A stretch of 64,000 nt of DNA from Selaginella moellendorffii (lineage: Eukaryota > Plantae > Lycopodiophyta): the NCBI RefSeq assembly GCF_000143415.4, contig NW_003314268.1, positions 2,186,494-2,250,493 of the forward strand, written 5' to 3'. The first letter of the stretch is position 1. The number at the start of each line of letters is the position of its first letter. Of the stretch, positions 10,912 to 58,486 are shown in pieces. Position numbers and translations under genes: made by a program. The notes under the pieces were generated by a model. It was not told the DNA's origin. It saw nothing but the letters and a program-made list of their open reading frames with translations, and did no database searches.

Positions 10912-12688
10912 CTTAAGTCCAGTCTAATCTGGGGAGGGGGATTGGGAGAGATTTGGGAATCCGTGGATGGAAGGCTAACGCTCTGTTGCTCATGCAGTGA
11001 GTAGCTAAAACTAAGTAGGACCAAGGAGGAGCTGGTACAATAGGCGGGAACCTTGGTGAGGGAACTTAGCACAAGCCAAGGCAGTGTTGGTCAGATAGAC
11101 GAGGTAAGCTGGCAAATTGGAAAGGAAAAATTTGTGGCTTACACTTAAGTCTAATTCAAGACTTGGGACTTGCTAGCCCCAAGAATGGCATCTATGCCAC
11201 TCATCCCTTGCACTTGGTCCAAGTGCTCCACGTGTCCGGTCCCAAGACCAACACCCAAAGGTACCATTGACATATCGGCCCATTATGCTAAGGCCATACC
11301 CATTCACCTTTGCCGCACTAGTGATCCAATACCACTTGCATCACAATCCCGTCTCTCCAAGACTGGGCCATCCGTACACGAGTGGTCATCCCAGATCCAC
11401 TCCTTAGCATCCTTAGGATGCCCACAGACATAGGGAATAACCTTCCCCAAAATCCCTTTGTCAGTTCCTACCAAGTCCCTTTTCCATCCATGGCCATGTT
11501 TGCCAACACTACCACTAGATCAAAGCCTGCAGGCCCGGCCACTGAGTTCCATTGTCCTCTGGGACTTCCTCATCATGTGACTGTATCCTTAGTCACTACA
11601 CTAGAGGGTTGCTCCTCCTCCTTTCCCCCATTTGGGACTTTGGGACAACATTTCGGAACACCGTGGCCCTACGCGAGCCCCGTGGGTACTCTCCCCACCT
11701 TCCACCCTTAGGTGCTCTAGCTATGGGCTTAGAGCGAGGTTCCGTTAAGCCACACAAGGTATCCAAGTAGGTAGTGCCACCCACACTTGGACTAGGAGCA
11801 TCGGCCATTCAATCTCCCGGGGGAGCTAGAGCCGGCTCTTGAACACTTCACCAAGCTACTCTGCTTGACAGTCCGTATTCACTCTAGCCTTGAACCTCCC
11901 AATGGTTATCCTGTCACCCAACACCTGGGTACAACCTTCCTGGGCCAAACTGGCTCCACTAGAGTCCTCCCCCTACTATACTTTTGGAGCTCACCAAACC
12001 CCCCAAGGTCTGGGAGACAAACGCTTTGGGCTTTCACCCTCAGACTCAAACTCGAACTCGGACTCAGACTTGGACTCGGACTTGGCCTCGGACTCGGCCT
12101 CGGTCTCGGTCTCGGTCCCGGTCTCGGTCTCGTCTTGGTCCCTGTCCCGGTCCCAGTCCCGGTCTCGGTCTCGGTCTCGGTCTTGACTTCAGACTCCGTC
12201 TTGGGTCCTTCTCAGACTCCATCTTGGATTCCATCTCGGGTCCATCTCAAACTCCATCTTGGGTCCATCTCGGACTCCATCTCAAACTCCATCTTGGTCC
12301 ATCTCAGACTCTATCTCGGGTCCATCTCGGACTCCATCTTGGGTCCATCTCGGACTCCATCTTGGACTCCATCTCGGGTCCACCTCGGACTCCATTTTGG
12401 GTCCATCTCAGGTCCATCTCGGACTTCATCTCGGACTCCATCTCGGGTCCATCTCGAGCTCCATCTCGAACTCCATCTCGAGTCCATCTCGGTCCATCTC
12501 GGACTCTTTTATTGCCCAATTCATGCTCGTTCCTTGAGCACTCCGATGGGAGCTCCACTCCCGCTTTTAACCTTTCATGTCGGAGCCTTTTAGTCCAAAC
12601 GTGTTACGCTCGCTTGGCTTTCGCTTTGGCCACTACCACGTGGCATCCTTTCGGCTCCACTTTGCGGCTTAGGGATTTGTGTCTCACA

Positions 12689-41916: not shown

Positions 41917-44358
41917 ATGCCGAGCCCGGTGAAGAAGGTGAGCGCTGGATTGATGGAGATCCAGGGTACGAGGAAGCTCGGTGTACGTATGTGGGGGTAT
42001 TTGCCGGCATCGTCGCCGCAGAGATCACCGATCGTCGTTCCCACCAAGGTGTCGCCGGCGAGCCCCGACGATGGGTGGAGGGCAGTGTGTAGTGGAGGTT
42101 GTGGTTTTGCTCTAGCTCTCTCAGGTAGGAACAGAAAAGAAACAGTCGCAAGAATGCAGATGGAATGAAGATGGGTATGCAGCCGCTTGAGTGAGTGAGT
42201 TCTTTCCCTTCGTGTTACAAGCCTCTCTTTCTTTTTTGCCGTGGGTCTCGTTGTTTTCTCGAGCTTATCCGCTCGATCGATCTCACAGTTTTTCTGTTTG
42301 TTCTGTGCCTTGTTTTTAAGTTGCAGACTCGGTGAAGTTGCTGCTTTGAAGACCAACAAAAAAAGAGAAAAAAACACTGTAACCATCCAGTTTTAGCCCA
42401 TTGCCTGCCTGTTTATTGCATTTTCCAAATGCCTCCTTTAGCAGACATCCTTTTCCTTTTGTATTGATGCTCTTCGTTTTTCTCGGTGACAGTTTTGCAG
42501 ATGCCAGAGCTTATCTTCTTCAGTAAAAAACAATAAAATTCTAACTTTGTGTTGTGGCTTTTGTTGTTTCTTCCTTTGATGGATCCTAACACAACAGAGA
42601 GTGGAAAATTGCATACTTGGGGCTCGACTGATGATCTTGGGCAGTGTTACCATATTTCCGGAAAACACCAGGTATATTATATTCTGCCAACTTAACTTTG
42701 TTTACCTGCAACTTCTGTGTTCAGGAGCATCCGGAACCTTTCCCATTACAAACACCGCCAGCGATTTTTGCAGCTGCAGGCTGGGCCCATTGCGCTGTTG
42801 TGACAGGTTAGTGGAGGTTTGAGCATCGGGAAAAAACCGATCTTTTCGTTTCAGAGACTGGCGAAGTGTATACGTGGGGATGGAAGGAATGCGTTCCAAG
42901 TGACAAAAACTGTGTGGAGCAGGGTGTTTCGGGAGATCCTTACGACTATCAAGGACGAACCGAAGAGTTAAAACACGTGGAACCCGACTTGGACTCGAGT
43001 CCCGGGCACTCCCCAGAGGCGCTTCGTAGGCTGAAACGGGCTGGACCCGACCACAATTCTCCAGAGAAACACCGACTAGGATCAAGCAGTAGCAGAGTAC
43101 AGAGTCCTCGCAGTGCTCTAAAGGTCAATGACAAAGTTGATTCCAGCAAGAAACGCAAAGTCAGCACGGATGAAGCTGGCTCTCCTGACAGTTCTGGAGC
43201 TGGTGTCGACGAAGCGGTGGTAGCACCTCTGTGCTGTGTTCCAATGCCTGCCAAAGTTATTCTTGTCGCAACGGGAGGGCGACATACTTTGTCACTTACA
43301 GGCAAGCTTTTCCGGGGCTTTTACTTTCTTTCGTTCACTCTGTCGCTCTCATAAGTGTTTTGTTTCGGATTTTAGACACTGGCCAGGTATGGAGCTGGGG
43401 ATATGGAGGCGAAGGTCAGCTGGGCCTGGGTACTCGCATGCGCACGGTCTCGTCACCGCAGCCAATACCGCTGGAGCCGTCAACTTACTGGCTGAGAAAA
43501 GGCAACAGGGCTGGTGCAGTAAAGCCACCGGGTAGTTATATAGTTGGAATTGCTTGTGGTGGGCGGCACAGTGCAATCTTAACAGGTTACAAGCTTGACG
43601 ATATCTACAATTCTGAAAGTTAGTCTGAAAGTTTTTTGCTGTAGATGGTGGAGCTGTTCTGACTTTCGGATGGGGACTCTACGGCCAGGTAACGTTTTAG
43701 CTGTTTTACTTGTCGTGTCCTGAAGAAAAGTCCTGTGTTTCAGTGTGGGCAAGGCAGCACAGAAGACGAGCTCAGCCCAAACTACGTGTCTTCTCTCGGT
43801 GGTCTCCACGTTACAGCGATCGCATCTGGGCTTTGGCACACACTGTGCATCACAGATACTGGGGAGGTGTACGCTTTTGGTGGGAATCAGTTCGGACAAC
43901 TCGGCGTTGGGGGCGATCACTCGGAGGTGGTGAAAACTCTTGATCAAAAAATCTTGAAGCTTAACCACTGTTGTTTGCAGACGCTCCCTAAGCTTGTAGA
44001 GGCCGCGGTGCTGGAGGACGAGTGTGCAAAGTCAGTGTCCTGCGGTGCTCGACACAGCGCAATAACCACAGGTACTGAGCTTCACAAAAATCCGCATTTC
44101 CAACCAGAAGTCGGTTTTTTTGTTCTTTTGAGCAGAAAAGGGGAAGGTTTTTTGCTGGGGATGGAACAAGTATGGCCAGGTAAGTTGCTGTATTCTCTTT
44201 TTGCTTGCAAAGCCCTCTTGATGATTTTGGAAACTTGGCAGCTAGGACTTGGCGACACGGGCGACCGTGATACTCCTCATGAAGTTCCGCTCGAGCACCG
44301 GGCAGTAAACGTAGCGTGTGGGTGGTGGCATACTCTCGCTCTCACAGACCAACCGTGA
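41917..44358 (+). CDS. RCC1-repeat protein (TCF1-like), multi-exon
   Basis: MWGYLP, WGYGGEGQLGLG, IACGGRHS, ASGLWHT, FGGNQFGQLG and VACGWWHT repeats. Confidence 0.9.
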
Positions 44359-44474
44359 TCGATCAAGGAGTGTTTAGCTTGATTGTAATTATTGTTTCAT
44401 TTTTTACTTAATTAATTGACTGGCATTGAGTTTAACTGTAGTTTTAAAATAGGTTGTGACCTAGATTTCTGGCA

Positions 44475-45893
44475 ATGGCTGTGGCCCGGGCGCCCGCGAA
44501 GGTGATCCTGTGTGGGGAGCATGCCGTCGTCCACGGATCCACTGGCGTGGCCGCCGCCATTGGGATCTACACGCACGCACGGATCGAGAGAGGTAAGGCG
44601 CGAGCTCTGGCGCTGGCTGCTCGTCTGATCCCTCATCGCCCAGAGCAGGAGACTCCCCCAGCTTTCTTCTCGTGCTGCCTGATCTCAATGTGACGCTGGA
44701 GTGGTCGCTGGATTTCATCCGGCAGGAGCTGGGGATTTCGGCGCTGGAGGAAGTGGATCCCATGGCTGTGCGGCAGGATCTCGCAGGGAAACTGGCGGCA
44801 TTGCTGGAGAAGCGAGGGACTGGTGGGAATTGTGAGCTTCCTCCCGAGTTTTCTGGTGGAAAACTAGCAGGAGTGGTGGCTGTTTTGTTCCTCTACGTCT
44901 CCATCGTCGGGTAAGAAGGAAAGATGGTTTTTTCTTCTCTTTGACAGGTTCTTCCAGGTTGAAGCCGGTGGTCTTGACGATCGACTCGGAGATTCCCATG
45001 TCTTGCGGGCTTGGATCCTCGGCAGCTCTAGCAGTCTCAGTGGCTGCCTCGCTCCTGGCTTTCGCTCGTCCCCAAAGGGATGGGAAGCTTGCTGGGAGCA
45101 ATTGGATCGGCGTTTGCGAGGACGATGCACGGCTCATCAGCAGCTGGGCTTTCGAGGCAGAGAAGATCATCCATGGAAATCCATCCGGGATCGACAATAC
45201 AGTGTGTACTTTCGGTAGTTCTTGCGTTTCTTTTCTTCGTTTACACAAGATCATGATCTTGGCAGGAAACGTTGTCAAGATGAAGAATGACAAGAGAGAA
45301 GTGCTCACAAACCTGGCCTCGCTGCAAATGCTTATCACGAACACCAAAGTTCCCAGAGACACCAAGAAATTGGTGAGCGGCGTTCGTCAGCTCAAGGAGA
45401 AGCACCCCAAGGTCATGTCTGGCATCTTTGATGTTATCGATTCCATCTCGGAAGACTTTCTCGGGATCCTCCAGTCACAGCCCGCGACTGTAAGCAAGAC
45501 TTTCGTGTCTCCCCAGCGGAGAATTCACTCGTTTACGTGCTTCGCAGGATCAGTCCCAGCAGGAAAAGCTGGAGGAGCTCGTCGTTTTGAACCAAGGTCT
45601 TCTTGGAACGATTGGAGTGAGTCATGCGTCCATTGAGAAGATTTGCAAGATCACAGCCAAGTACGGCTTGAAATCCAAGCTCACCGGAGGAGGAGGTGGC
45701 GGCTGCGTGATCACTTTACTTCCAAGAGGTAGAAAGCTTTTCTCAAATCTTCTTTATGTTCTCCTAACTCTCGCTCGCTCTTGCAGGACTGTCTCCAAAG
45801 GTCTTGGAACAAGTGAGCGACGATCTAAACAGCTCTGGGTTTGAATGCTTACAAGCAGAAGTTGGTGTTCAAGGAGTCCAGATTTTGCAATAG
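44475..45893 (+). CDS. MVK: Mevalonate kinase
   Basis: APAKVILCGEHAVVHG, GLGSSAA, EKIIHGNPSGIDN and SKLTGGGGGGC GHMP motifs. Confidence 0.95.
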
Positions 45894-45912
45894 CATCGAA
45901 GGTTTGCTCGAT

Positions 45913-47943
45913 TCAAGACTGGTTTTTCTCCCTGAAGCACTTGGTACATTCGCACGCGAAGCCGTAGTCCGACAGCATTGCTTGTCTCTCGGTGTACGAT
46001 AAATCTTCCTCCTCGATGTATGAGGTGAAAATCTGAAAACCATTTTGAGTGAAAACAAGAAAGAAAGATTTGATTCACCTGTTCTCCTTTCATGATCTTC
46101 CTCGTCGCAATTATCACAGCATTGCCATTTATGTCCTGAAAAACAGTCGAGTCAACTGTGCTCTATCCTCACTACAAAACAGACCTCATCTCGCTTAAAA
46201 GCCTTCGCATTCGGCTCGCAAGAGTGGTTTATGCAGCTGTGCAATGCGAAAAACCCAGAACCTGGAAGTACATTCAAATTCCACGAATAGTTCTGGACGT
46301 TAAACCCACCTTGGCAGAAGGAAGCGTACTTCTCGCCCAAAGCCTCAAACAGTGGTCGAGTAATTTGTTCTGTTTGTTCCTGTGATTCAAAGACTAGGCA
46401 CTTGTCCATCCATGTTATCTTCTAGTTACCTTGAGAGCTGGCTCAAGATCTTGAATGTAGAGAAAATAGTTTTCAACGGGTGAGGCGACGACGACATCTC
46501 TGGAAAAAGCCGTGTGACTCGAGATTCTCAACGACAGAGATGGCTTACAGGTTGTTTAGCTCGAACATGCCGATGATGCTCCCATAAATCTCCAAAGAAA
46601 AAACTGGTGGTGTCAAAGAAAACGCCAAAAGAAGCAAAGGTTTAGGATACGAGGTGCAAACTCCGGCTCCCCCAGCGCAGCTTTGAGCTGGCTCAAGGAC
46701 TAGAAAAAACATGAACATGTTAGTGTACATAATCGTTATGCTTTGGAACTTACTGCTTCCGCTAATTCCTTGATTTGGCTCCTGAAAGATGCTTCTTCTA
46801 AAGGATCAACGTCGTCTGGAAGAGCCACGGCTTCCCACCACCTGAACTTGGCGAAATTAAACTCTTACGAAGCGAAAAGCGTACTTACAGACGCTTTTCT
46901 CCCATGGCAAATGGTTTCCACGCCTCAAGGAGTGCATTTCGGTCTGTAACTCCACTGCTTTCAGAGAGCTTTTTCGTGCGAAGCATAACCTTCGCAATCA
47001 ACTGCACAGAGAACGTAAAACATAGTCGCAAAACAAAGAAACAAGCGAAGGCTACCTTGCTGGCCAAATGGAAAATGTCATTGGTTTCTGGAGAGGATGA
47101 AAGTCAGGACGAGTAGAGAACAGCAGTTTACCATCAGCAAATTCTTTGAAAAGAACAAGCTCGTCCCTGTGTTGTGAAACACCATCGCAAAGCAACGAGT
47201 GGTGATCATGCCAGGCCCTTTGTGCACACGATTTGCTACTCGCAAAAGGAAGCAAGCAAGAGTTATGAGAAGGAAGTCGCAGCGCATTCACAAACTAACC
47301 TGCAGTAAATCTCCGAGCATCCACCGGAGCACTTGACTACCTCCGGTAGCAAAAACTTGTCTCCATGAGGAAGAGAGAAACCATCACCTTTTAGAAGAGC
47401 TAACGCTTCCTCCGAAGAAACACCATGCCGGTGATGGTCTTCTTCTTCATCTTCTTCTTCGTGATAGCAGCACGACTGAGTCTCTGGAGCTTCAAGTTTG
47501 CGTTGTATTTGGAGCTGGATGGAACCGACGTAGCGAAAGCAAAAGCCACACACAACCGCATCGTTCTGTCCATGAATGAACAAGAACAAGAACAAGAACT
47601 CGTAAAGCAAAACAATTCCAATCAAATACCTTGTTATGGCTGTGCTGTGCAGCAAAGAGAGGTTCTTCGATCAAGATCACCTCTTCCGCGTCAAAATCTC
47701 TCTCGGCAAAGAGGCCTGCAAGATCTCCAAATCTAGAATTCGCGAGAGAAAAGCACAGCGATACCTTTCCCCATCGTCGCGGTAGATTTCACGCGCAATG
47801 CGGCACCGGTCAGCTGAGAATAATACTCCTGATCCATCAAATCGTGTCAATCCACAGCGCTTTGTCAGGACCGAGCCTCGAGTTACCTCCATTTGCTTCC
47901 AAGGAGGAGAAACGAGCAGCGCGCCACCGTCCTCCATAGCCAT
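45913..47943 (-). CDS. ATXR2: SET/MYND histone-lysine methyltransferase, ATXR2/SMYD5-like, multi-exon
   Basis: VCGFCFRYVGS, EIYGSIIGMFELNNL, SCINHSCEPNA and post-SET YGFACECTKC. Confidence 0.9.
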
Positions 47944-47997
47944 GGGCGATAAACCCTAACAAAAACCTCCGCATTGGAATTAGGGCATCCTTGCCAA

Positions 47998-49662
47998 ATG
48001 GCTCAGCAGAGGCGCCGGCACAGCAGCAGTGAGCGCCAGGCTCGTAGACCCGGCTCCAATGCTCTTGAGAAGGCTGGAGATTCCCAGCAAAGCACTGGAT
48101 CGCGGCTCAAGCACGGCATTTTGGCCTTGGTGCTTGTTTTCTTCTTCTTAGCGTGGTATTTCCATTATTCTAGAGATCCACTCGCTAGTTCTTTGGGAGG
48201 AGGTGAGGATCTGTCCTACAGAGATATCTTGAAGGTATGCTAGATCGATTTCTCCATGTTTTCTTCATCCATCGCTTTGCTTTTCTCCTTTTTCCTCAGG
48301 CAGCATCGCGAGCTCCGCGTCTTGGAGCTAAGAGAAAGCTGAATGGTACTGTTCTCGCCTATGTCACGCCATGGTTAGTTCGTGTTTGATTGTTCTTCTT
48401 TCTTTCTTCTCATGGATGATCTTTTGTCGCAGGAATTCCAAAGGATATGATATGGCAAAAAAATTCCGGCACAAGCTCACTCACGTTTCTCCTGTGTGGT
48501 ATCAGCTAAGAAGGTAGGCTTTGCTCCTCACTGTTGTGTAAGTTGATTGTTCTGTAAATTCTGTAGAGATGACAAAGGCATGAGTTTAGCTGGCAAGCAT
48601 GATGTGGATCAAGGATGGATTTCCGAAGTGCGAAAGCAGGGATTTCCACTGGTATGATCTTATAGTTTTTATGTGTATCTATCAAGTTTTTGGTCTTGTG
48701 ATTCTTATGATAGTTACTTCTTTCAGTGACCATTTCGCGCAGATTGTTCCGCGTGTGGTGCTTGAAGGCTGGTCCTTAGACAGCATGCTTGTGAGTGCAG
48801 ACGAGAAGCAAAAGGCAATCAAGCTAATCCTCGAAGAGTGCAAGTACGTGAGTCTTTCATCTTTTTCTTTTTTGTGATTTTCTCTTAGGGAGCAAGCTTA
48901 CGATGGCATCGTGCTGGAAGCGTGGAATTCCTGGGCTTCTTACAGAATACTCGAGAACCATCGTTTACGTGAAAAGGTTTGTAAGAAACAATTTCAAGAA
49001 CATTGTCTGACAACAAGAAATCTACAGGCTCTAGCATTTATCCGAGAACTTGGCTCGTCCTTACACAAGCTCAACGCTGCTAGCGCTACCCGTCCATTGC
49101 AACTCGTGCTCGTTATACCACCCGAGCGTGGAGGAGGCCCGGAAGAATTCACGCGAGGGGACCTCCATTCTTTGCAGCACGCCGTCGATGGCTTCTCGCT
49201 CATGACTTACGATTTCTCAAACGCCTATCGTCCAGGCCCGAACGCACCGCTTCCCTGGATACGCTCCTGCCTCCACTCTTTACTCGCAGGGAAATCCAAC
49301 GAGGTCTCTTCCAAGATCCTGATGGGAATAAACTTCTATGGAAACGACTACGTTCTTCCGCGAGGTATGCTAGAGCTTCTTGCTCGAAACACTTTCTTAA
49401 CGCTAGTTTCATTCTAGGTGGTGGAGCTATTGTTGGCGACCAATTCTTGGAGCTTCTGAAAGAGTACACTCCCAAGCTCATATGGGATTCGATGAACCGA
49501 GAGCATTACTTTGATTACTCCAAGGATCAAAACAAGCACAGGGTCTACTTCCCCACTGCCAAGAGCGTTACTTCGAGGCTAGAAGAAAGTGTTTCCGCCG
49601 GTGTTGGAGTTTCTATATGGGAGATTGGCCAAGGCTTGGAGCATTTCTTCGACCTCTTGTAA
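47998..49662 (+). CDS. CHID1: Chitinase domain-containing protein 1 (GH18-like, SI-CLP type)
   Basis: N-terminal TM; [63 protein letters not shown]. Confidence 0.92.
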
Positions 49663-49729
49663 AAATGTCTTGCGTGGCATCATTAAAAATCCAAACCATC
49701 TGAGGAATCACGATGCAACAGTTGTCTAG

Positions 49730-50014
49730 ATCTTGTCAACTATAGCCATGGCCGCGGACGCAATTCCACTCACCCAGAAGCGTTCCAGCCGGAGCGTTTT
49801 CTCAGCTCCAGCAGCGCTATCCCTGCCACCTCGATTTCATTCCATTCTCGTCTGGTAGGAGAGTTTGTCCTGACTATCCACTGGCGATGAGATCGTTTTC
49901 CGTGTGGCCAGTTTGCTCCAGGCATGGGCGGGATCGACATGGAGGAGTCCACGGCAAGTATGGCGATGAAGCTCAATGCCGCCTTGCTTGTAAACCCGGC
50001 TCGATCAAAATATG
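49730..50014 (+). pseudogene. Degraded duplicate of the 3' end of the neighbouring P450
   Basis: Aligns to about 51505-51830 (FQPERFL, DFIPFSSGRRVC) with several deletions and frameshifts. Confidence 0.88.
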
Positions 50015-50274
50015 ACAGCGCAATAAATTGAGAAACGGAGATTCCTAGCGCTCGATCAATTTGTTAACCCTACTTTTCATTCTAGGTGGTCTTCTGACTT
50101 TAAGGATCAACACAAAAAAAGTTAAATTAAATTTAAATTAAAAATTTAAACCATGTGGGCTGCTACTGCGAGTTTTTTATGGGAGCATGCATAACACGGG
50201 GCCATGCGGCGGAGACGGCAAGGTGCCTTGCGAACCCCGCCCACCGGGGTCTTCGTTGTCAAGTTCTCTACAAT

Positions 50275-51842
50275 ATGGCCATGGCCGTGGAGATCCAGAC
50301 CTTTGAAGCGATGGACTTAGGTGTGGCTTTGTTCGTCCTGGGCATCAGCTGGATCACACTATCACTCCTCATAGGGAGAATTCGATCGTCGCAACAACGG
50401 CGCCTCCCTCCAGGTCCATTCTCTTTCCCCATTTTTGGAGCGCTCTTCTCCCTCGAGGAGCCACTCCACCAGCACTTTGCAAAGATCAGCAAGAAGTATG
50501 GGCCGATCGTCTACCTCAAGATCGGAATGGCCCCGTTCGTGGTGGTGAACAACAACGAAATGGCCGCACAGGTTCTTAAGACCCACGATCTCGAGTTTGC
50601 AAGCCGGCCGGACGACGAGTTCTTTCGGATCGTCAGCCACAACTGGAACGGTCTCATCCTCGGGCCTTTAGGTGACAAGTGGAAAACCATGAGGAGGATT
50701 TGCAGCACACACCTGTTTAGCAACAGTATGCTCAAGGCAAGCACAGGATTCCGGGAGTCGGAGATGAAGCATACAGTCAAGTCCATTTTCCAGCAATCCG
50801 AGACAATGATCAATTTGAAAGAGGTTTTCAGTAGTCTCTTGTCGAATTCGCTATGCCTGGTTCTTTTTAGCGAGCGGGGGCTGGAGGTCATGGATCTCAG
50901 CCAGAAGATAGCATCTCTAAGCTTGCACCTGAACATCGGTGCCCTGCTTCCGGCACTTGACGGGCTGGATCTCCATGGAATCTACAAGAAACTCAACAGG
51001 GAGCTCATGCCTCGCCTGAAGCTCTTGGTGGAAGATCAAGTCGACAAGCATCGACGCAGAAAAGATCAAGCTGGGGACGGGTTCGCCCCTCGAGACTTCA
51101 CTGACGTTCTTATATCTCTCGAGGACAAGGATAAATTGCCAGACATTTCCATTTTGGCACTGCTCGTGGTAAGTTTTACCAGCATCGTGATATTGGTTTT
51201 TTTCACTTCTTGCGACAGGACCTGGTTGTTGCAGGGTTGGAAACTTCACTAGTGACGCTCGAGTGGACAATGGCGGAGCTCATAAACCATCCCCGAGTCG
51301 TGTCCAAGGCTCAAGACGAACTGGACAGCGTTGTAGGGAGAGCTCGCGCGGTGCAAGAGTCCGATCTTCCAAACCTTCCATACATCGATGCCATTGTCAA
51401 GGAATCACTGCGTCTCCACCCGGCGGCCCCACTGGGAGTTCCTCACAAGAATCTCAAGCCCGTCAACCTGGGCGGCTACACCATCCCCGCCGGCTGCAAG
51501 GTTCTCGTCAACATATGGGCCATCGGACGCGATCCCGCTCGCTGGTCCGACCCAGGAACGTTCCAGCCGGAGCGTCTTCTCGGCTCCAGCAGCGCCATCA
51601 ACGGGCAGAACTTTGATTTCATCCCATTCTCATCGGGCAGGAGAGTATGTGCCGGCTATCCACTGGCGATGAGATCGATCGCGTTTTACGTGGCCAGTTT
51701 GCTCCAGGCATTTAATTGGCGTCCTGCTACCCCGGGCGGGATCGACATGGAAGAGCGCACGAGAAGTACAACGATGAAGCTCAATGCTGACTTGCTCGTG
51801 AACGCGTCCATCAGGCTCGATCAAAATATAATTTGCAGCTGA
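50275..51842 (+). CDS. Cytochrome P450, CYP71 clan (A-type), one intron at 51169-51218
   Basis: LPPGP hinge, AGLETS I-helix, KESLRLHP, PERL and heme motif PFSSGRRVCAG. Confidence 0.95.
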
Positions 51843-51931
51843 GCTATAGGCATGTGATGAAACTGTTTAGCGTTGAGATCGCGCGTTAAAATATAACTAT
51901 TTATTATTTAAGTTCTTTATTATTAATATAA

Positions 51932-52106: not shown

Positions 52107-52824
52107 TTACTTTCCAGCGATGGCCTCTTTGATCGATCGGGTCACCGACGAAATGCCACTGGCTTCCTTCGATCCATCTTGTCCTTCTCGAGATTTATCC
52201 ACATCACTGGCATTCTCATCGAAATGATCTCTAGCAGCATCGTATTTGTCCTTGAGCTCCTCCTTGGCTTCGTTGATCGCGGTGTAGCTGTCTGCTCCCT
52301 CATCCGGTGCGTCCTTCTTGTCGCTCGCATTTTTCCTCGCGTCCTCAAACCTCTTCTGGACGGACTTCTTCGCCTCCTCGATCGCGTCGTATGTTCTATC
52401 CCCGCTCTGGAAGACTCTTTCACGAGCTTCGTCCGAGCTGCGATTCAGATCCTCCAGGATCTAAGAATGGGACAGGAGAAATCGGGAGGTCTTGTAGAGA
52501 AACTCACCTCTTGCCAAGCTGGTCAGAGATCGACGATCCATCCTTAGCTTGGAGTTGCTCCTCACTCTTGCCCTGCGAGATTTCGCCACTTGAGAAGAGG
52601 GAAAGACAACCTTTTCATACCGCGATTCCCTTGTTCTTGCCCGGCTCGCCGTGACGAGCAACATGCTGCGCTAAGAAATTCCCCATATTTTCCTGAGCCT
52701 GCCCTCTGTAGCGAGCGATCGTATCAAACTCCGACTCCTGGCCACCAGCATTTTCCTCATTCTGATTTGCCGCATCGCGAACGACTGCGTCAAGCCCCGA
52801 TTCACCTTCTTGCGCTCTCGCCAT
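52107..52824 (-). CDS. Hydrophilic LEA-like protein, 3 exons (mostly missed by the ORF track)
   Basis: MARAQEGESG...KGIA|GKSEEQLQAK...LGK|SSDEARERVFQSGDRTYDAIEEAKKSVQKRFEDAR...INEAKEELKDKYDAARD...IKEAIAGK*, joined by GT-AG junctions in compatible phase. ABRE- and CE3-like motifs at 52881-52945. Confidence 0.7.
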
Positions 52825-52963
52825 TGCTCTGCCCTGCCGAAGAACCCTAAAACCTTTAAACACCAATAGGTGGACCAATACACGTGTCACCACGTGGTCG
52901 TTGGAGAGAACGACACGTTACAACGCTACAGCCTTACACGCGTGAAACTAAGACCACATTTAC

Positions 52964-53075
52964 TTTCGTTGAGATCGCATTTATCACAAGCAACTTTGTG
53001 AACTCATCACAAGCTCCTTTTTCGTTGAGATCGCATTTATCACAAGCCACTCTGTGATCTCATCACAAGCTCCTT
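52964..53075. repeat. Tandem duplication, 2 x 56 bp
   Basis: TTTCGTTGAGATCGCATTTATCACAAGC...CATCACAAGCTCCTT repeated at 52964 and 53020. Confidence 0.9.
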
Positions 53076-53107
53076 GCATGCTTCACGCTCAAAATCCCAC
53101 CTTTTGT

Positions 53108-56100
53108 CTACGACCATACCAAGGGCTGCAACCAGACTTTGCCCGATGGGAGAACCAGCTCCAGTTCACTAGGCAACTCCCGTTCTTGTTGGATGGTGCA
53201 TGCGAAGCAAACCCTGGGAAGCCTTTCACCGTCAAGCTCATATGCCAAGTAGCTACCAAGTGCATTCCCAACCGCCTTCAAAACTTTGGGATGCAAGCAA
53301 TCCGTCGGCAGGAGGGGCAATCCCACCCAAACAGCTGCTTTGATATTCCCAGCCTCGTTGGGGTTGAAGTCTTGCTGGAAAGGCTGGAAGAGGATCACGC
53401 GATCTTCGTACTGCGCAAACCGCCTCTCCAGCAACTTCTGAACATCCAGCGAGTTTGCGAATGCCAGCTCGAAGAAACCGTTTGCCAGGAAACGAGCACC
53501 AACATACGAGTGCACGTTCCAGCTCGTACAGGCCAGGTTTTTGAGGACCTCCTCAGTGATGACGTCTCCGCTGCATGAGCCCAGCACCAGATGATCCTCC
53601 AATCCTCGCTTGAATAATTGCAGTTTCATGTCTCGCAAATCGACCCTCCGCACATGACCAGGATCGTAGCCGTTTGCATCCTTTGCCAGCTTCTGATATT
53701 CTAGATCTTCATCTATACTCGTTTCGTCTATGAATCCTGCTAACCAGTCTAGGAAATTGTTGAATGAAGGAAAGGAGGCACTGTGCTGGTTGGTTGTCGA
53801 TGTCGTTTTAGAATTACTCGGATCCAAGACAGTAGCAGATTCATGTTGGTCGGTATTCGTCTCTGAAGTGTTCTCAGCTGCTTTCCCAGTTTCTGGCTTC
53901 TCCTTTATCGGTTCTTTGTCTGCTTCGTGCTCATGCCCCATTTCCGCTTCATTCAGAGCAGATATGGTCTGAACGTTGGCTCCGATGAGATTAACGTTTC
54001 TGGTTTTCAACAGGCCGAACACCTCGTCCGTCAAGGTTATGAAGTCGCAGTCCGTGAGGTCCATTTTTCGGAGCTGTGGTGCTGCAGCCAAAACCTTGGG
54101 CAGTTCTCGAATGGGAATTCCTCGCATAGATATCTCTTCCAAGCTGATGAAGTAGTCACCACTTAAATCAACCCATGGTAACGCTCTCAGTTGCATGCAT
54201 TGCTTCAATTCCAGCTTCCTCAGCCTTGGAAGCAGTCCTATACTCGCAGGTAAGCCAGATATTTGCGTGTTGTTCAAAACCAGCTCCTCCAAGTATGAAA
54301 AATATCTCAACGCTTCCTCGTCAGGGAGCTCTTTCAATCCGGCACAGCCTCTCAGGTTCAAGTGGACAAGGTTGGGCAGCGCCTTGGGATGTATATCCAA
54401 GCGTTGCAGGCGCTCACAAAACGCCAGTTTGAGGATACGAAGACGAGGAAGTGCCCCTGGTTGCAATTCTGGAAATGCTTCTAGTCTTCCGCATCCCGTC
54501 ATGAAAAGCTCTTGTAACGAAGGAAATGCACCTGAACTTCCGAAAGCCTCTGGTAGAGATTGCAAGGACAAGCAGCCTTCAAGATCCAGCTTTTGAAGCC
54601 ATTGTAACTCCTGCAGATCTGAAGGAAGTTGCGACAACGACGTGCAGCCACGAAGGTCGAGAGCAAGCAGTCCCAAGAACGACTTGGCGAGATAGTCCGG
54701 TAGCTTCAGGAGTGATCTGCAAGTGTTGACATCGAGAACCTCTAGAGCGGCCAGGGACTGGAGCTCGTCTGGAATGACTGAAAGTTTTTCGAAGTAAAGG
54801 CTGAGATGTACCAGCCTGGTTGAAGAGATAGCAGGGAAGCGTTCTGCAGTTCGGCTGCTGATCCATAACCTGGTCAACATTTGTAAGGCTGCTAGATTCT
54901 TTAGGCCTTGTACTGGAAGTTCGGATGTTACGCAGCTGCAAGGACTGTGCCGGTTTTGGTCCCAGATATCCCCACACCCTCTTGCGTTGAGATAACGCAA
55001 GTTGACGAGATTCGATACTTTGTGCACTGGAAAGCTCTCCAATTGACAATTTTGCATGTTCAGATGTTCTAACTTCGCCAGCCAAAGAGTCCGGCACAGA
55101 TCGGATGCTGCTATAACTAATGTCGAGGACGACCAGCTCTTTGAGCTTCCCAATCTCCATGGGAAGAGATATTAAGCCCGTCCTGCTCAGGTCCAGTACA
55201 CGGAGCTTTTTAAAGCTCCACAGAAACCGCCCGGTAAGATGTTTCAGCTGAATGTTGTTGCTAAGGAGTAGCACTTCCACATCCGGAGCCCGAGTTCCAA
55301 GCTTATCGACGTTCTCCACCTGATTTCCTATCAAAGAAAGCTTCTTAGCGTTGAACTTCTCTTGGCCAGTACCTTTGCATAGTCCTGCAGGAAACTCCCT
55401 TCCAGACAGAAACAGGCACGCATACTCAGTGGCCTTCTTCTGGTTTTCCAATATGTAAATCGCCATATCCCGAAGCACATCGTGTATTTTGCAACTCAAG
55501 AACTTCGTGTTCTGGCTATGTGTCCAACCTACTTCCAGATCCACGAGTGAGCGTCCTATAAGCTGGCCCAGAATGTAATAAGCCTCAACCTGAGGATCTT
55601 CATCGTCTTTGTATCCTATCAAGCCATCACCAATCCAATACCCAATGAGCTGCTCCACCTCTATAACTGCATCCTCAGGAAAGGCTGCGAAGTAGAGAAA
55701 GCACTCTTGCAGTGCTCTGCCTCGGGCTTTGTCAATCATATCGAGTTCGTCATAGCTAAGCTTGAGTCTGTGATACACCTGGTTCTCTTGTTCCTCGTTC
55801 AAAACCTCGGCATTCTTCAACTTGCGTAATGTAGAATCCCAGTCGCCTAGCTGCTGCTTGCCTGCCATGCTTCCACCAATGACTTTGAGAGCTAAAGGCA
55901 GTCCTTTGCACTCAGAGACCACTTGCTTTACTCTTTCGGCAAGTATTGGTTCCATGTCGTGTTCTAGCTGTTGCCGGTCTTGTCCCGGAAATGCACAGCC
56001 ACAGAAGAGATTCCAACTATGCTCATCCGAAAGCAGTTTCACTTCGATGACCGTTGATGGCACCTTGTCAAAGACACTGTTGTTCCGGGAAGTCACCAGA

Positions 56101-57131
56101 ATTTTGCTGCCTGGAGCATCCACCACATCAAACCACTGCAGCACATTTCCATCCCACACATCGTCCAAGATCAACAACACTTTGCTGTTCTTCAAGCAGT
56201 TGATGAGGGTTTTCCTGCCAGCTTCCTCGGATGAAAAGAGCTGCTCCCCACGGCCGATGTGTTTGCGTAATCTACTTTGCAACCTGGCAATGTTGGGATT
56301 TCGTGCAACCGTGAGCCAATATACCTTTCCTCCAAAGTGATTGTTCACCGATAAACTGTTAGTGACAGTTTGTGTCAACAGCGTCTTTCCTGAACCTCCC
56401 TTGCCCCAAACACCAACCCATCGTCCTGTGCCATCTCGAAGGACTGCTTCAAGTCGGCTACTCAATTCCTCCAGTCCAAACACCAGCTTCGGAATCGGCT
56501 GAAGTTCTGTAGTTGGCTCGTCGACCACGTCTAAACCAGCCGAGTGACTCGTTGCTTCATTCGTTATCTCAAAAATCGCACGATCTTTGCTATAACTCTC
56601 AGACTGTGTGCATCCACAGGTCTTTGCCGAAAGTGAAACGTATCTGTAATTGTCTTGAAGCAACCGTAGTACCTCACTGCATTGTGTGACAACCTTGGCA
56701 GACAGGGCCACGTTCCAAGTACTGGCAGCCTCGTGAAGTTCCTTTATCTTGATCAGAATACTCATGATTCTGCGCGAGAGCCTGTACCTGCAGAACAATG
56801 CACTGATCAATTGATGCGTTACTCAGAAGAAAGAAGAATGCATCTTACTTGACGAAAACGTTGAAGGAATGCACGCTCCTGCACTCGATGATCACTGCCT
56901 GCGCATCTTCTAGGCAGGCCCGAAGGCTTGCAAGCCAGGTGTCAGCAACATTCTTGAGCTGCGGATTGTTCCCAAGGCTCCCCAGTTCAGACACGACCGG
57001 CTTGACACAAGAATCCACCATTTTTGCTAATTGCATACAGTATTCCCGGCACATCACAACCTTTGCCGCTTCTACTATCGCCAGGTGCACTATCTCTGCA
57101 ATGAGCGCCGAGACAAAGCCTGGATCCACCA
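53108..57131 (-). CDS. NLR immune receptor: RPW8-like/4-helix N-terminus, NB-ARC, LRR and C-terminal DUF4283-like domain; frameshift near 55080 (possible pseudogene)
   Basis: P-loop GKGGSGKT, LLILDDVW, GSKILVTSR, CKGLPLAL, CFLYFAAFPED, IHD; LRRs continue across two overlapping frames; one intron at about 56788-56847. Confidence 0.88.
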
Positions 57132-58486
57132 TGATTCTTTCTCGTGGCCTAAGATCTATCTCTAGGCGTCTCACCTGATCATTCGCTCCTGAGGCGAGGG
57201 CGGTCAGACCCGTGGACGAGAGTGGCGAGATGATTGACAGGATGTTCGGAATCCATCTGACCCCTCACGCAAGCGATTCAAGATTTTTTGAGGCCTTCTA
57301 AAATCAGAATATGTGACTTTGGGAGGAGCCCGATGGAAAACCGTGCTCAAGGTGTCATACAACACATCTTTCATAAATCAATTTTATGGGCATTAAATCT
57401 TTATTGTCAACCACAACCATGTGGATACGTACTCTAACTCCATAGAATATGCTTTTGTTGACATTACAACCTTGACCTTCCAACAACTTGCATTTGAATT
57501 ATGTTTATATGTGAGCTATGGCGTGCAATTCGTAAAAGGGTGGATTTTACAACGGTGGATTTCACTCACACCACGTGTATGCTTGCTATTGGTCCACGTG
57601 TATTATGAGTGTATAAAAAACACAGGCATAGAATATTTTTCAATCCTTATGCCCCAGATGGGGCATCAATAGCAATGACCCATGCTATGTATGGAATGGA
57701 GCCATTCATGGCCCATAGACCCATTCATCCCATGCATTCGAGCAAGTTGTTAATGTTGCAAACCAAATGGACAATCGACTAAATTGCATACCATACTACC
57801 TTATCTAGAGCACTATGTTCTCACGTCTTGCTCTTGGCACTCATGGCAAGAGTTTATCTTTCGTTGCAATGCATTTACAAATTGCACGCCTTTTTTAACA
57901 TAGTGTCATAGCAAGCGTAAGTGAACTCCATCTAGAATTTGGGAGTATGGCAGCCTTGATCGTCATCAACAGCCATCGCCGTGTCCTCCCCACATTGCCG
58001 ACCGCCGCTATGCTGCTCGCAATCATCGATGCTCCCATTGTTACCCGCTGCAGCGTCTAGGCAATCGTTGAATCCTCTTACTTCCTCTGTCTTGCATTGT
58101 GATTCTTGAGGTGCATTCACCATGGATGCGAAGAACTCCTGGGCTCTCATAGCTGGAAAATGTTGGAAATTGAGTCACACCTGGGCACACCTCTTTTAAC
58201 ATAGTGTTCATAACAAACGTAAGTGAACTCCATCTAGCTCCATTGCAAAGCCATGGATATATACTATCTGGAGTCATGTCTTTAATGGATCCCATTGAGT
58301 TTATCTTTTGTTGCAATTGATTTCCAGTGTAGCTCTTTCAACACTTGAGTTTTGTACCATGATGCTTAGAAGATTTGCATATGACTCAAAAGTAGGTTGA
58401 AGTCTAACCAATTCGATGAATTGGTGGGGCTCATACTTCAATTGTGTACTATGCAAAGGTGCATAGTGTTGATGTTTAGACGTAAA

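What the first reader, a model, noticed from the sequence alone, without database searches (positions are those of the whole stretch)
53108..53790. NLR with an integrated LINE-ORF1-like (DUF4283) domain
Seen: after the LRRs and an acidic linker, the same ORF continues with NGFFELAF...DVQKLL...VILFQPFQQDFNP...AVWVGLPLLP..CLHPKVLKAVGNALG...D...PRVCF...LPSELEL...WLQPLVW. This is the pattern of the RRM-like DUF4283 region of plant L1 ORF1 proteins. It stops just before the usual zinc knuckle, and no RT follows. Established: integrated domains in NLRs act as effector baits. Inference: a domesticated retrotransposon RNA-binding domain used as a sensor or decoy on an RPW8-like receptor, a class that in seed plants acts as helpers; it might conceivably sense retroelement or viral RNPs.
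Basis: partly seen in the sequence, partly recalled or inferred. Interest (0 to 1): 0.75.

Follow-up and report, generated by a model that had tools for sequence, protein, structure and literature searches.

The report
Spikemoss immune receptor with LINE-derived domain
A Selaginella moellendorffii NLR immune-receptor gene ends in a transcribed, still-foldable RNA-binding-type domain taken from the first protein of a LINE retrotransposon; the copy in this window is disabled by a 5-base deletion, and the other haplotype's copy is intact.

Summary
On the minus strand, the last 227 codons (53791-53111) of an NLR gene match Pfam DUF4283 (E 9e-15, 55 bits against a cut-off of 27). The ORF stops where relatives continue into a CCHC zinc knuckle, and no RT follows. 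The nearest relatives (26-37% identity) include ORF1 proteins of complete L1-type LINEs. AlphaFold models show one canonical RRM followed by a degenerate RRM-like half.

The gene has two exons: an RPW8-like coiled coil, a 61-nt intron, then NB-ARC, winged helix, LRRs, an acidic linker and DUF4283. Spliced RNA contigs from three studies run unbroken across the LRR-DUF4283 junction.

It separates the NB-ARC frame from the LRR-DUF4283 frame. The other haplotype (GL377601.1) and three of four RNA data sets carry the intact form, which encodes 1322 aa.

Between haplotypes, dN/dS is 0.33 for the domain and 0.37 for the whole gene, so the domain is not decaying neutrally. The closest NLR relative ends right after its LRRs.

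DUF4283 is already listed as an NLR integrated domain in angiosperm surveys, and RefSeq already models this protein. A bait or sensor role is inferred, not shown. Other readers of this scan noted the same fusion on other pieces of this genome.

The parts
57133..57339 (-). 5' UTR; transcript contigs begin between 57289 and 57339
   Evidence: Contig ends lie at 57289 (followed by adapter sequence), 57323, 57332 and 57339 in four runs.
56849..57132 (-). Exon 1: ATG at 57132, RPW8-like / CC four-helix-bundle N-terminal domain (aa 1-95; the last codon is completed by the first base of exon 2)
   Evidence: Pfam RPW8 E 1.7e-5, 24.9 bits, below the cut-off of 30.4. A profile built with homologues hits the NRG1.1 and ADR1 CC-R domains in the PDB at E 2e-6 to 1e-5. 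All 20 homologue N-termini match Pfam RPW8.
56788..56848 (-). Intron, 61 nt, GT..AG
   Evidence: Contigs of X1, X6 and X10 skip it (joint 56784>56846, cut +3).
53108..56787 (-). Exon 2: NB-ARC, winged helix, LRRs, linker, DUF4283, stop. It is broken in this window by a 5-bp deletion and intact in the other haplotype.
55746..56438 (-). NB-ARC domain (P-loop GKGGSGKT, LLILDDVW, GLPLAL; the IHD motif lies further on)
   Evidence: Pfam NB-ARC E 7.5e-44.
55461..55682 (-). Winged-helix domain (WH_DRP) carrying the MHD-type motif IHD
   Evidence: Pfam PF23559 E 6.6e-10. IHDVL is at aa 529.
53960..55346 (-). Leucine-rich repeat region
   Evidence: Pfam LRR_4, LRR_14 and LRR_8. It is collinear with the LRRs of P0106 at 42% identity.
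55081..55082 (-). Site of the 5-bp deletion (frameshift) in the window allele. Other alleles have CCTGC on the + strand here, which reads ...SVPDSLGRLAKLEHL...
   Evidence: Contigs of X4, X6 and X10 carry the insertion and X1 does not. Haplotype locus L007 carries it. The frame is restored to 1322 aa. The spacing matches homologue P0106.
53792..53959 (-). Acidic, Ser/Thr/Asn-rich linker after the last LRR
   Evidence: Translation: about 13 D/E against 5 K in the first 58 residues. The closest homologue, P0106, ends at this point.
53111..53791 (-). LINE-ORF1-derived segment (last 227 aa); Pfam DUF4283 core at 53213-53548
   Evidence: Pfam E 8.9e-15. There are 103 distant relatives at 21-37% identity. 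Some alignments reach back to residue 9-24 of the segment.
53372..53596 (-). First half of the domain: canonical RRM fold (beta-alpha-beta-beta-alpha-beta), with the RNP1-like motif NGFFELAF
   Evidence: AF2 model with pLDDT 84-93 here. VIA-align gives Z 9-10.4 and rmsd 1.6-2.0 A over 70-75 residues against RRMs such as U2AF65, TDP-43 and CFIm68.
53111..53365 (-). Second half of the domain: degenerate RRM-like beta-alpha-beta4 unit carrying VWVGLPLLP and VGNALG
   Evidence: AF2 model of this part alone has pLDDT 90.5. In a search of 48,161 chains nearly all of the top 50 are RRMs, but Z is only 5-6.2.
52984..53107 (-). 3' UTR with a 56-bp tandem duplication (52964-53075); transcript contigs end at 52984-53003
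   Evidence: It carries indel differences between haplotypes.

Best explanation
This is a real, transcribed NLR immune-receptor gene of Selaginella moellendorffii. Its architecture is an RPW8-like coiled coil, NB-ARC, winged helix, LRRs, an acidic linker, and a C-terminal integrated domain. That domain descends from the ORF1 protein of an L1-type LINE retrotransposon (Pfam DUF4283). It folds as an RRM followed by a degenerate RRM-like half. It has lost the zinc knuckle and all of ORF2.

Shown: the domain match, the fold, the LINE context of the nearest relatives, splicing and transcription across the junction, an intact 1322-aa allele on the other haplotype, a 5-bp frameshift allele in this window, and fewer amino-acid changes than neutral decay predicts.

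Inferred: the domain is an exapted integrated domain that works as the receptor's bait or sensor. An effector, or another ligand that normally engages RRM or ORF1-type proteins, would bind or modify it. That would release the LRR/NB-ARC lock and allow nucleotide exchange and oligomerisation. The N-terminal four-helix bundle would then act as the membrane-permeabilising executioner. No partner NLR is needed on this reading, because none lies in the window. The window allele is a natural, still-transcribed null or truncated allele. Such alleles are common at NLR loci.
For: - Domain and boundaries: Pfam DUF4283 E 6e-14 to 9e-15 in the window and E 3.5e-13 in the intact allele. The ORF ends at the family's last conserved position, just before the knuckle.
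- LINE origin: the second-best relative, P0002, is directly followed by an ORF2 with Exo_endo_phos, RVT_1 and zf-RVT. P0003 carries DUF4283 plus zf-CCHC_4, with RVT_1, zf-RVT and RVT_3 downstream. The literature calls DUF4283 the dominant ORF1p domain of plant L1 elements (PMC5203782, PMC11288735).
- Fold: the first half is an RRM at Z 9-10.4, and the second half is RRM-like at Z 5-6.
- Transcription: the 61-nt intron is spliced out in contigs of three runs. Contigs X1 52984-54401, X4 53132-54687 and X6 53003-53995 cross from the 3' UTR through DUF4283 and the linker into the LRRs.
- Intactness: in L007, exon 2 is one 1227-codon ORF, giving 1322 aa in total. The NB-ARC motifs are present.
- Constraint: between haplotypes the last 227 codons have 6 synonymous and 7 non-synonymous changes, dN/dS 0.33, p 0.05. 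Adding the contig variants gives 11 synonymous and 9 non-synonymous, p 0.002. The whole gene has dN/dS 0.37, p 9e-5. The segment is at most 37% identical to any known relative yet is still open and folds confidently.
- Addition to an older receptor: the closest NLR, P0106 (45% identity in NB-ARC, 42% in LRR), stops right after the last LRR. None of the 120 best NB-ARC homologues carries PF14111.
Against: - Nothing here shows that the domain binds anything. The bait role rests on analogy with HMA and WRKY integrated domains.
- Constraint within the Pfam core alone is unresolved (1 synonymous and 3 non-synonymous changes), and the two-haplotype test is borderline (p 0.05).
- The family's GPW motif is not kept, and the RNP1/RNP2 aromatic residues are only partly present.
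- One haplotype of the sequenced plant carries a null allele, so the gene is dispensable at least in heterozygotes.
- No orthologue carrying the fusion was found in any other species, so its age is unknown.
- Surveys often treat transposon domains on NLRs as passengers (PMC4759884).
Confidence: 0.55

Rival explanations
1. Passenger extension. A LINE ORF1 fragment became part of the last exon by chance and is tolerated. The receptor recognises its ligand through the LRRs, and the domain has no sensing role. At most it has a structural or stability role.
For: - Transposon-derived domains are found fused to NLRs across plants without known function (PMC4759884).
- The closest relative works without the extension.
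- The GPW motif is lost, and the canonical RNA-contact aromatic residues are only partly kept.
- The Pfam core has 3 non-synonymous changes against 1 synonymous.
- A null allele segregates.
Against: - The ORF stays open for 227 codons although it is at most 37% identical to any relative.
- It folds confidently, with pLDDT 81 for the whole segment and 90.5 for the second half.
- Non-synonymous changes are fewer than neutral expectation (dN/dS 0.33; pooled p 0.002).
- The truncation lies exactly at a domain boundary.
Confidence: 0.3
2. Direct nucleic-acid or RNP sensor. The ORF1-derived RRM module still binds RNA, so the receptor detects retroelement or viral RNA or ribonucleoprotein.
For: - The first half is a well-formed RRM with an RNP1-like GFFxxxF motif.
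- Type I LINE ORF1 proteins bind their own RNA; this rests on general knowledge and was not tested here.
Against: - The zinc knuckle that accompanies the domain in LINEs is gone.
- The RNP2 position and the second RNP1 position are not aromatic.
- No plant NLR is known to sense RNA directly (own knowledge).
Confidence: 0.08
3. The locus is dying. Both alleles are on the way to pseudogenisation, and the transcripts are residual.
For: - The reference haplotype has a frameshift that would truncate the product at 830 aa, yet it is still transcribed (X1).
- S. moellendorffii has very few NLRs (PMC5039405).
Against: - The second haplotype and three of four RNA data sets carry the intact frame.
- The NB-ARC motifs are intact.
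- Whole-gene dN/dS is 0.37, p 9e-5.
- The spacing of the intact form matches the homologue, so the deletion is the derived and probably young state.
Confidence: 0.07

Closest known systems
Angiosperm NLR-IDs carrying DUF4283 (Fragaria vesca, Malus domestica and Medicago truncatula in Sarris et al. 2016, PMC4759884; rice and Zea luxurians in PMC10257044)
   Same: An NB-ARC-LRR receptor with a Pfam DUF4283 domain in the same protein. The domain is retrotransposon-associated and its role is unknown.
   Different: The angiosperm cases are catalogue entries from predicted proteomes, and no transcript, fold or selection analysis is cited for them. This one is in a lycophyte with under 20 NLRs and sits on an RPW8-like/CC N-terminal class. 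It has RNA support, two sequenced alleles (one null), and no detectable relation to those fusions beyond the domain family.
ORF1 protein of plant L1-type LINEs (DUF4283 + zf-CCHC_4; e.g. poplar Celine ORF1, PMC11288735; survey in PMC5203782)
   Same: The same domain family, matched over its full length. The nearest relatives are ORF1 proteins with an endonuclease/RT ORF2 right behind them.
   Different: There is no zinc knuckle, ORF2, poly(A) or target-site duplication, and identity is only 26-37%. The segment is the 5' part of an element, whereas ordinary dead LINE copies keep the 3' part. It is embedded in a host exon.
CC-MAEPL (CC Cbl-N/OG6) NLRs of non-flowering plants, e.g. MpCNL1 and CrCNL1 (Chia et al. 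2024, PMC11218826)
   Same: The best NB-ARC homologues are Marchantia Mp3g09170/09180/09210, MpNBS-LRR5/6, Sphagnum NLRs and Ceratopteris KP509_01G123500, at 35-41% identity. The N-terminus MVDPGF... aligns with MADPGF, MVEP and MAE in those proteins.
   Different: That paper reports finding no integrated domains in CC-MAEPL NLRs and takes this as a sign that they act as singletons or helpers. This receptor carries one. Membership by their MAEPL HMM could not be tested here.
Seed-plant RNL helpers ADR1 and NRG1
   Same: The N-terminal profile hits the CC-R domains of NRG1.1, ADR1-L2 and ADR1 (E 2e-6 to 1e-5). ADR1-L2 is the second-best solved NB-ARC match (E 4.9e-41).
   Different: ZAR1 scores nearly as well (E 2.5e-37). 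The receptor has an integrated domain and highly polymorphic LRRs, which are sensor-like features. An EDS1-dependent helper role is not testable here.
Integrated-decoy NLRs RGA5/Pik-1 (HMA) and RRS1 (WRKY)
   Same: A non-canonical domain is fused to an NLR. These are the paradigm for how an integrated domain can bait effectors (as summarised in PMC4759884 and PMC11218826).
   Different: Those receptors work with a genetically linked helper NLR and have known effector ligands. Here no second NLR lies in the 64-kb window and no ligand is known.

Membership tests
Pfam DUF4283 (PF14111) | Score above the curated gathering threshold over most of the model | tested here: met
   52.2, 54.9 and 49.8 bits against 27.2, covering profile positions 5-116 of 124.
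Pfam DUF4283 (PF14111) | Family motifs: W in the first helix, GFFxxxF, GPW, VWVRLPxLP, IGxxxG | tested here: inconclusive
   W, GFFELAF, VWVGLPLLP and VGNALG are kept. GPW is replaced (RRFAQYEDR) and the W of LxxxxW is F.
Plant L1 LINE ORF1 protein (type I) | CCHC zinc knuckle (zf-CCHC_4) after the DUF4283 region | tested here: not met
   The ORF stops at the last DUF4283 position, whereas relatives continue into CFxCGxxGH. No knuckle remnant lies downstream.
Plant L1 LINE ORF1 protein (type I) | An ORF2 with endonuclease and reverse transcriptase follows on the same strand | tested here: not met
   Nothing of the kind lies downstream; the next gene is a 199-aa host gene. Relatives P0002 and P0003 do have one.
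Plant NLR (NB-ARC-LRR) | NB-ARC with P-loop, Walker B, GLPL and MHD-type motifs, followed by LRRs | tested here: met
   NB-ARC E 7.5e-44, WH_DRP and several LRR families. GKGGSGKT, LLILDDVW, GLPLAL and IHD are present.
NLR with integrated domain (NLR-ID) | A non-canonical domain in the same reading frame and the same transcript as NB-ARC-LRR | tested here: met
   Met in the intact allele (one 1227-codon exon) and in RNA contigs across the junction. In the window allele the frame is broken at 55081/55082.
NLR with integrated domain (NLR-ID) | The domain acts as bait: it binds or is modified by an effector and this activates the receptor | not testable with these tools
   This needs binding and cell-death assays.
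Paired sensor/helper NLR | A second NLR gene next to it, usually head to head | tested here: not met
   The NB-ARC query finds only this gene in the 64-kb window. The annotated neighbours are a 199-aa gene, a P450, and a 747-aa-plus gene with no Pfam hit on record.
RNL (ADR1/NRG1-type CC-R NLR) | RPW8-type N-terminal domain | tested here: inconclusive
   Exon 1 alone gives Pfam RPW8 E 1.7e-5, but 24.9 bits is below the cut-off of 30.4. A profile with homologues hits NRG1.1 and ADR1 CC-R at E 2e-6, against E 0.09 for ZAR1. The joined exon 1+2 protein was not searched.
RNL (ADR1/NRG1-type CC-R NLR) | The NB-ARC groups with the RNL clade | tested here: inconclusive
   PDB matches are ADR1-L2 4.9e-41, ZAR1 2.5e-37, ADR1 5.3e-34 and NRG1.1 1.2e-23. 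No tree was built.
CC-MAEPL NLR (Chia et al. 2024) | N-terminal MAEPL motif scored with the authors' HMM | not testable with these tools
   The HMM is not available here. By eye, MVDPGFVSALIAEIV aligns with MADPGF, MVEP and MAE of bryophyte relatives, with a 4-residue gap in helix 1.

The most novel reading that the evidence does not exclude
The ORF1-derived tandem RRM module is a working sensor. It is a bait for effectors that target RRM or ORF1-type proteins, or a direct detector of retroelement or viral RNA or RNP. It would turn an executioner-type (RPW8-like / CC-MAEPL) NLR into a self-contained sensor in a plant with fewer than 20 NLRs. The intact and null alleles, and the highly diverged LRR-ID half, would be kept by balancing selection. 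This would be the first functional integrated domain on that NLR class and the first domesticated LINE ORF1 domain in plant immunity.
Probability: 0.2. Interest if true: 0.75.

Novelty: new member of a known kind. Interest (0 to 1): 0.5.

Why it matters
- Transposon-derived domains on NLRs are usually dismissed as annotation noise. This case has splicing evidence, transcription across the junction, a confident fold, two natural alleles and signs of constraint. That makes it a usable test of whether a LINE ORF1 domain can be exapted by an immune receptor.
- It corrects two published statements, both probably made because the v1.0 gene model was incomplete. One is that S. moellendorffii has no RPW8-domain gene (PMC5039405). 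The other is that NLRs of the CC-MAEPL lineage carry no integrated domains (PMC11218826).
- It gives a structural reading of DUF4283, whose function is still listed as unknown: an RRM plus a degenerate RRM-like half. This fits plant L1 ORF1 proteins into the RRM plus zinc-knuckle 'type I' scheme.
- The natural 5-bp null allele is a ready-made control for genetics.

Tried and rejected
- Intron instead of frameshift at 55081: rejected. The two frames overlap without room for an intron. Contigs and the other haplotype show a plain 5-bp indel.
- Close relatives of the domain: an exhaustive phmmer search of 1.84 billion representatives gave nothing below E 1e-10. A word-based search of the domain region within 375-1192-aa proteins gave nothing. 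So no donor LINE and no orthologous fusion were found. The 50%-identity clustering and the length limits mean this is not proof of absence. The RefSeq models (1321 and 1327 aa) fell just outside the 1300-aa ceiling.
- A first attempt to reach the allele through the P450 neighbour landed on a paralogous P450 region without the NLR (L004). The right loci came from cluster members P0232 and P0231.
- A sequence profile of the domain against the PDB gave no significant hit. Exon 1 alone against the PDB gave none.
- The supplements of Chia et al. as held contain no 'DUF4283', but the file is cut, so this is inconclusive.
- The search of earlier findings by sequence returned nothing.
- Left out by rule: the joined exon 1 + exon 2 protein (1322 aa) was built only inside scripts, to count length and codon changes. 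It was not sent to any search or fold tool. Searches were done exon by exon, by reference.
Full report
**Where and what.** The finding lies on the minus strand. Two long ORFs overlap there. ORF 56810-54579 (743 aa) holds an NB-ARC domain (Pfam E 7.5e-44), a winged helix and the first LRRs. ORF 55153-53108 (681 aa) holds the remaining LRRs, an acidic Ser/Thr-rich stretch and a C-terminal match to Pfam DUF4283. That match scores E 6.1e-14 and 52.2 bits against a cut-off of 27.2. The last 227 aa alone score E 8.9e-15. Upstream, an ATG at 57132 opens a 95-codon exon that ends at a GT. After 61 nt, an AG leads in phase into the NB-ARC ORF.

**Organism.** I checked this. The neighbouring P450 (50275-51839) is 100% identical to RefSeq XP_024527264.1 of that species. 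The window is part of scaffold GL377572.1 of GCA_000143415.2.

**Transcription and gene model.** Logan contigs of four runs from four studies were laid on 52600-57400.
- The runs are only guessed to be RNA. However, contigs in three of them skip exactly the predicted 61-nt GT..AG intron, and contigs stop at 52984-53003 and 57289-57339, one of them with adapter sequence. So they are transcripts.
- Contigs X1 52984-54401, X4 53132-54687 and X6 53003-53995 run without a joint from the 3' UTR through DUF4283 and the linker into the LRRs.
- No single contig spans the whole gene, but overlapping contigs tile it.

**The frameshift.** The two ORFs cannot be joined by an intron. From the LRR periodicity I expected about five bases to be missing between ...SVPDSL and LAKLEHL....
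- Contigs of X4, X6 and X10 carry five extra bases at 55081/55082, and X1 has the window's form.
- With these bases, exon 2 is one frame, the junction reads SVPDSLGRLAKLEHLNMQNC, and the product has 1322 aa. The window allele would stop after 830 aa.
- Through the P450 neighbours I fetched the other haplotype (scaffold GL377601.1, locus L007). It carries the five bases, its exon 2 is a single 1227-codon ORF, and Pfam finds NB-ARC, WH, LRRs and DUF4283 (E 3.5e-13) in that one ORF.
- The spacing of the intact form matches the closest homologue (SLPSSIAKLIKLERLN). So the deletion is the derived state.
- Public gene calls exist for both alleles. The window's is 1321 aa with no Pfam hit on record. 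The other haplotype's is 1327 aa and lists PF14111 as a weak hit. The RNA contigs support a 61-nt intron and 1322 aa. I did not resolve the 5-residue difference from the public model.

**What the C-terminal domain is.**
- Relatives: an exhaustive phmmer search of 1.84 billion cluster representatives gave 103 hits, none better than E 7.7e-9 and 21-37% identity. The named hits are seed-plant proteins from Cryptomeria, Turnera and Ipomoea. All ten hits scanned are DUF4283 proteins, and five of them also match zf-CCHC_4.
- LINE context: the second-best hit, P0002, is followed with a 4-nt overlap by an ORF carrying Exo_endo_phos, RVT_1 and zf-RVT, which makes a complete L1-type LINE. The third-best, P0003, has RVT_1, zf-RVT and RVT_3 downstream. 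This agrees with the literature. DUF4283 is the dominant ORF1p domain of plant L1 elements and is tied to zf-CCHC_4 (PMC5203782). It is also the ORF1 domain of poplar Celine (PMC11288735). Its function is unknown.
- Boundaries: in a 58-sequence alignment the Selaginella segment covers the family from end to end. It stops at the last conserved position, where relatives go on into the zinc knuckle. W, GFFxxxF, VWVxLPxLP and IGxxxG are kept, and GPW is not. No other DUF4283, knuckle or RT remnant is present in the 64 kb.

**Fold.** An AlphaFold2 model of the 227 aa built with this alignment has a mean pLDDT of 81, and 84-95 from residue 60 onwards.
- Foldseek's best PDB matches are all tandem-RRM proteins such as U2AF65, PABP, hnRNP A2/B1 and HuR (E 5e-5 to 1e-3, low TM).
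- VIA-align places residues 66-140 on canonical RRMs with Z 9-10.4 and rmsd 1.6-2.0 A over 70-75 residues, covering whole RRM domains.
- The second half was modelled alone (pLDDT 90.5, beta-alpha-beta4). In an unbiased search of 48,161 chains it again finds almost only RRMs, but at Z 5-6.2, which is middling by the tool's own notes.
- So DUF4283 here is an RRM plus a degenerate RRM-like half. NGFFELAF sits where RNP1 would be, but only one of its two stacking positions is aromatic.
- No solved structure is a sequence relative.

**Decay or maintenance.** Comparing the window allele with L007 by Nei-Gojobori gives these values:

| Region | Synonymous | Non-synonymous | dN/dS |
|---|---|---|---|
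| Whole gene | 27.5 | 34.5 | 0.37 |
| LRRs | 17.5 | 21.5 | 0.37 |
| Last 227 codons | 6 | 7 | 0.33 |
| Pfam core | 1 | 3 | no power |

- A binomial test against the share of non-synonymous sites gives p 0.05 for the domain segment, and p 9e-5 for the whole gene.
- Adding variants seen in RNA contigs gives 11 synonymous and 9 non-synonymous changes and p 0.002. That contig list is partial and mixes samples.
- The segment is still open and foldable although it is at most 37% identical to any relative. Together these points argue against a neutrally decaying insertion, with modest strength.

**An addition to an older receptor.** The best NB-ARC homologue is P0106, a complete Logan transcript of unknown species. 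It is 45% identical, RPW8-positive, and collinear through the LRRs at 42%. It ends just after the last LRR, where the Selaginella protein goes on for another 285 aa. None of the 120 best homologues lists PF14111.

**Class of the receptor.**
- Exon 1 alone matches Pfam RPW8 below threshold (E 1.7e-5, 24.9 bits against 30.4).
- A profile of exon 1 with 19 homologous N-termini hits the CC-R domains of NRG1.1, ADR1-L2 and ADR1 (E 2e-6 to 1.4e-5), then MLKL. ZAR1 comes only at E 0.09. All 20 N-termini match RPW8.
- The NB-ARC is about equally close to ADR1-L2 and ZAR1.
- The best homologues are bryophyte, fern and other non-seed-plant NLRs. They include the Marchantia Mp3g091xx cluster and Ceratopteris 01G123500, which Chia et al. 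2024 treat as CC-MAEPL NLRs. The N-terminus MVDPGF... aligns with their MADPGF, MVEP and MAE.
- That paper states that no integrated domains were found in CC-MAEPL NLRs. Its NLRtracker table for S. moellendorffii v1.0 lists no RPW8-NLR and no NLR with a transposon domain. Zhong and Cheng 2016 state that RPW8 is absent from this species. Both probably reflect incomplete gene models.
- No second NLR lies in the window.

**What is known already.** DUF4283 appears among NLR integrated domains in Fragaria, Malus and Medicago (PMC4759884), and in rice and Zea luxurians (PMC10257044). Other first readers of this scan noted an NLR with in-frame DUF4283 on other pieces of this genome. At least one of these is very likely the L007 allele. 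The kind is therefore known. The lineage, the receptor class and the supporting evidence are new.

**Mechanism.**
- Shown: the architecture, expression, fold, origin, allelic state and moderate constraint.
- Inferred: the domain serves as bait or sensor, and its perturbation releases the NB-ARC switch, so that the N-terminal four-helix bundle executes cell death. This follows the resistosome model established for CC and CC-R NLRs.
- The main rival is a tolerated passenger domain. Direct RNA sensing and whole-locus decay are less likely.

**Unexplained.** Haplotype divergence jumps from 0.44% (9 differences in 2047 nt of CC plus NB-ARC) to 2.8% (55 in 1972 nt) at the start of the LRRs, which is also the frameshift site. 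Synonymous divergence differs about tenfold, so relaxed constraint after the frameshift cannot be the cause.

Noticed in passing
window 53108-57132 compared with L007 12866-16895: Divergence between the two haplotypes changes abruptly inside the gene. It is 0.44% across the CC and NB-ARC part and 2.8% from the first LRRs to the stop. Synonymous divergence is about tenfold higher in the 3' half. This could reflect old LRR-ID haplotypes joined to a recently shared 5' half by recombination, or balancing selection.
   Followed up: partly
L007 392-11646 compared with window about 44000-51850 (L006 4192-11568): The other haplotype has a tandem duplication of the block GHMP kinase - SET - GH18 - P450 directly beside the NLR. 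The window haplotype has one copy. The NLR neighbourhood is therefore structurally polymorphic.
   Followed up: partly
window 52964-53075: A 56-bp tandem duplication (2 copies, 94% alike) lies in the 3' UTR of the NLR. It has indel differences between haplotypes and RNA contigs (inserts at 53057 and 53088; deletions at 52973-52988 and 53012-53017 in L007).
   Followed up: partly
window about 52107-52824, minus strand: A small annotated gene (199 aa, no Pfam hit on record) starts about 150 nt beyond the NLR's transcript end. Its exon at 52620-52830 sits in contigs of much higher depth than the NLR, and a splice-like loose end lies at 52620.
   Followed up: no
window 3599-3944, 9368-9907 and 12189-12506: Three arrays of a 12-bp minisatellite (GTCCGAGATGGA, 20-34 copies each) are present, the third in inverse orientation. 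They lie in a region of strong purine skew (2-10 kb) and are open in several frames.
   Followed up: no
L004 (GL377572.1 2304894-2326451): A paralogous copy of the P450 and its upstream region lies elsewhere on the same scaffold, beside Dicer-like, PPR, RRM and terpene-synthase genes. It is 96% identical over 1.8 kb and has no NLR next to it.
   Followed up: partly
window 56849-57132: The RPW8-like first exon contradicts the published statement that S. moellendorffii has no RPW8-domain gene (PMC5039405). The v1.0 NLRtracker table of PMC11218826 also lists no RPW8-NLR for the species.
   Followed up: partly
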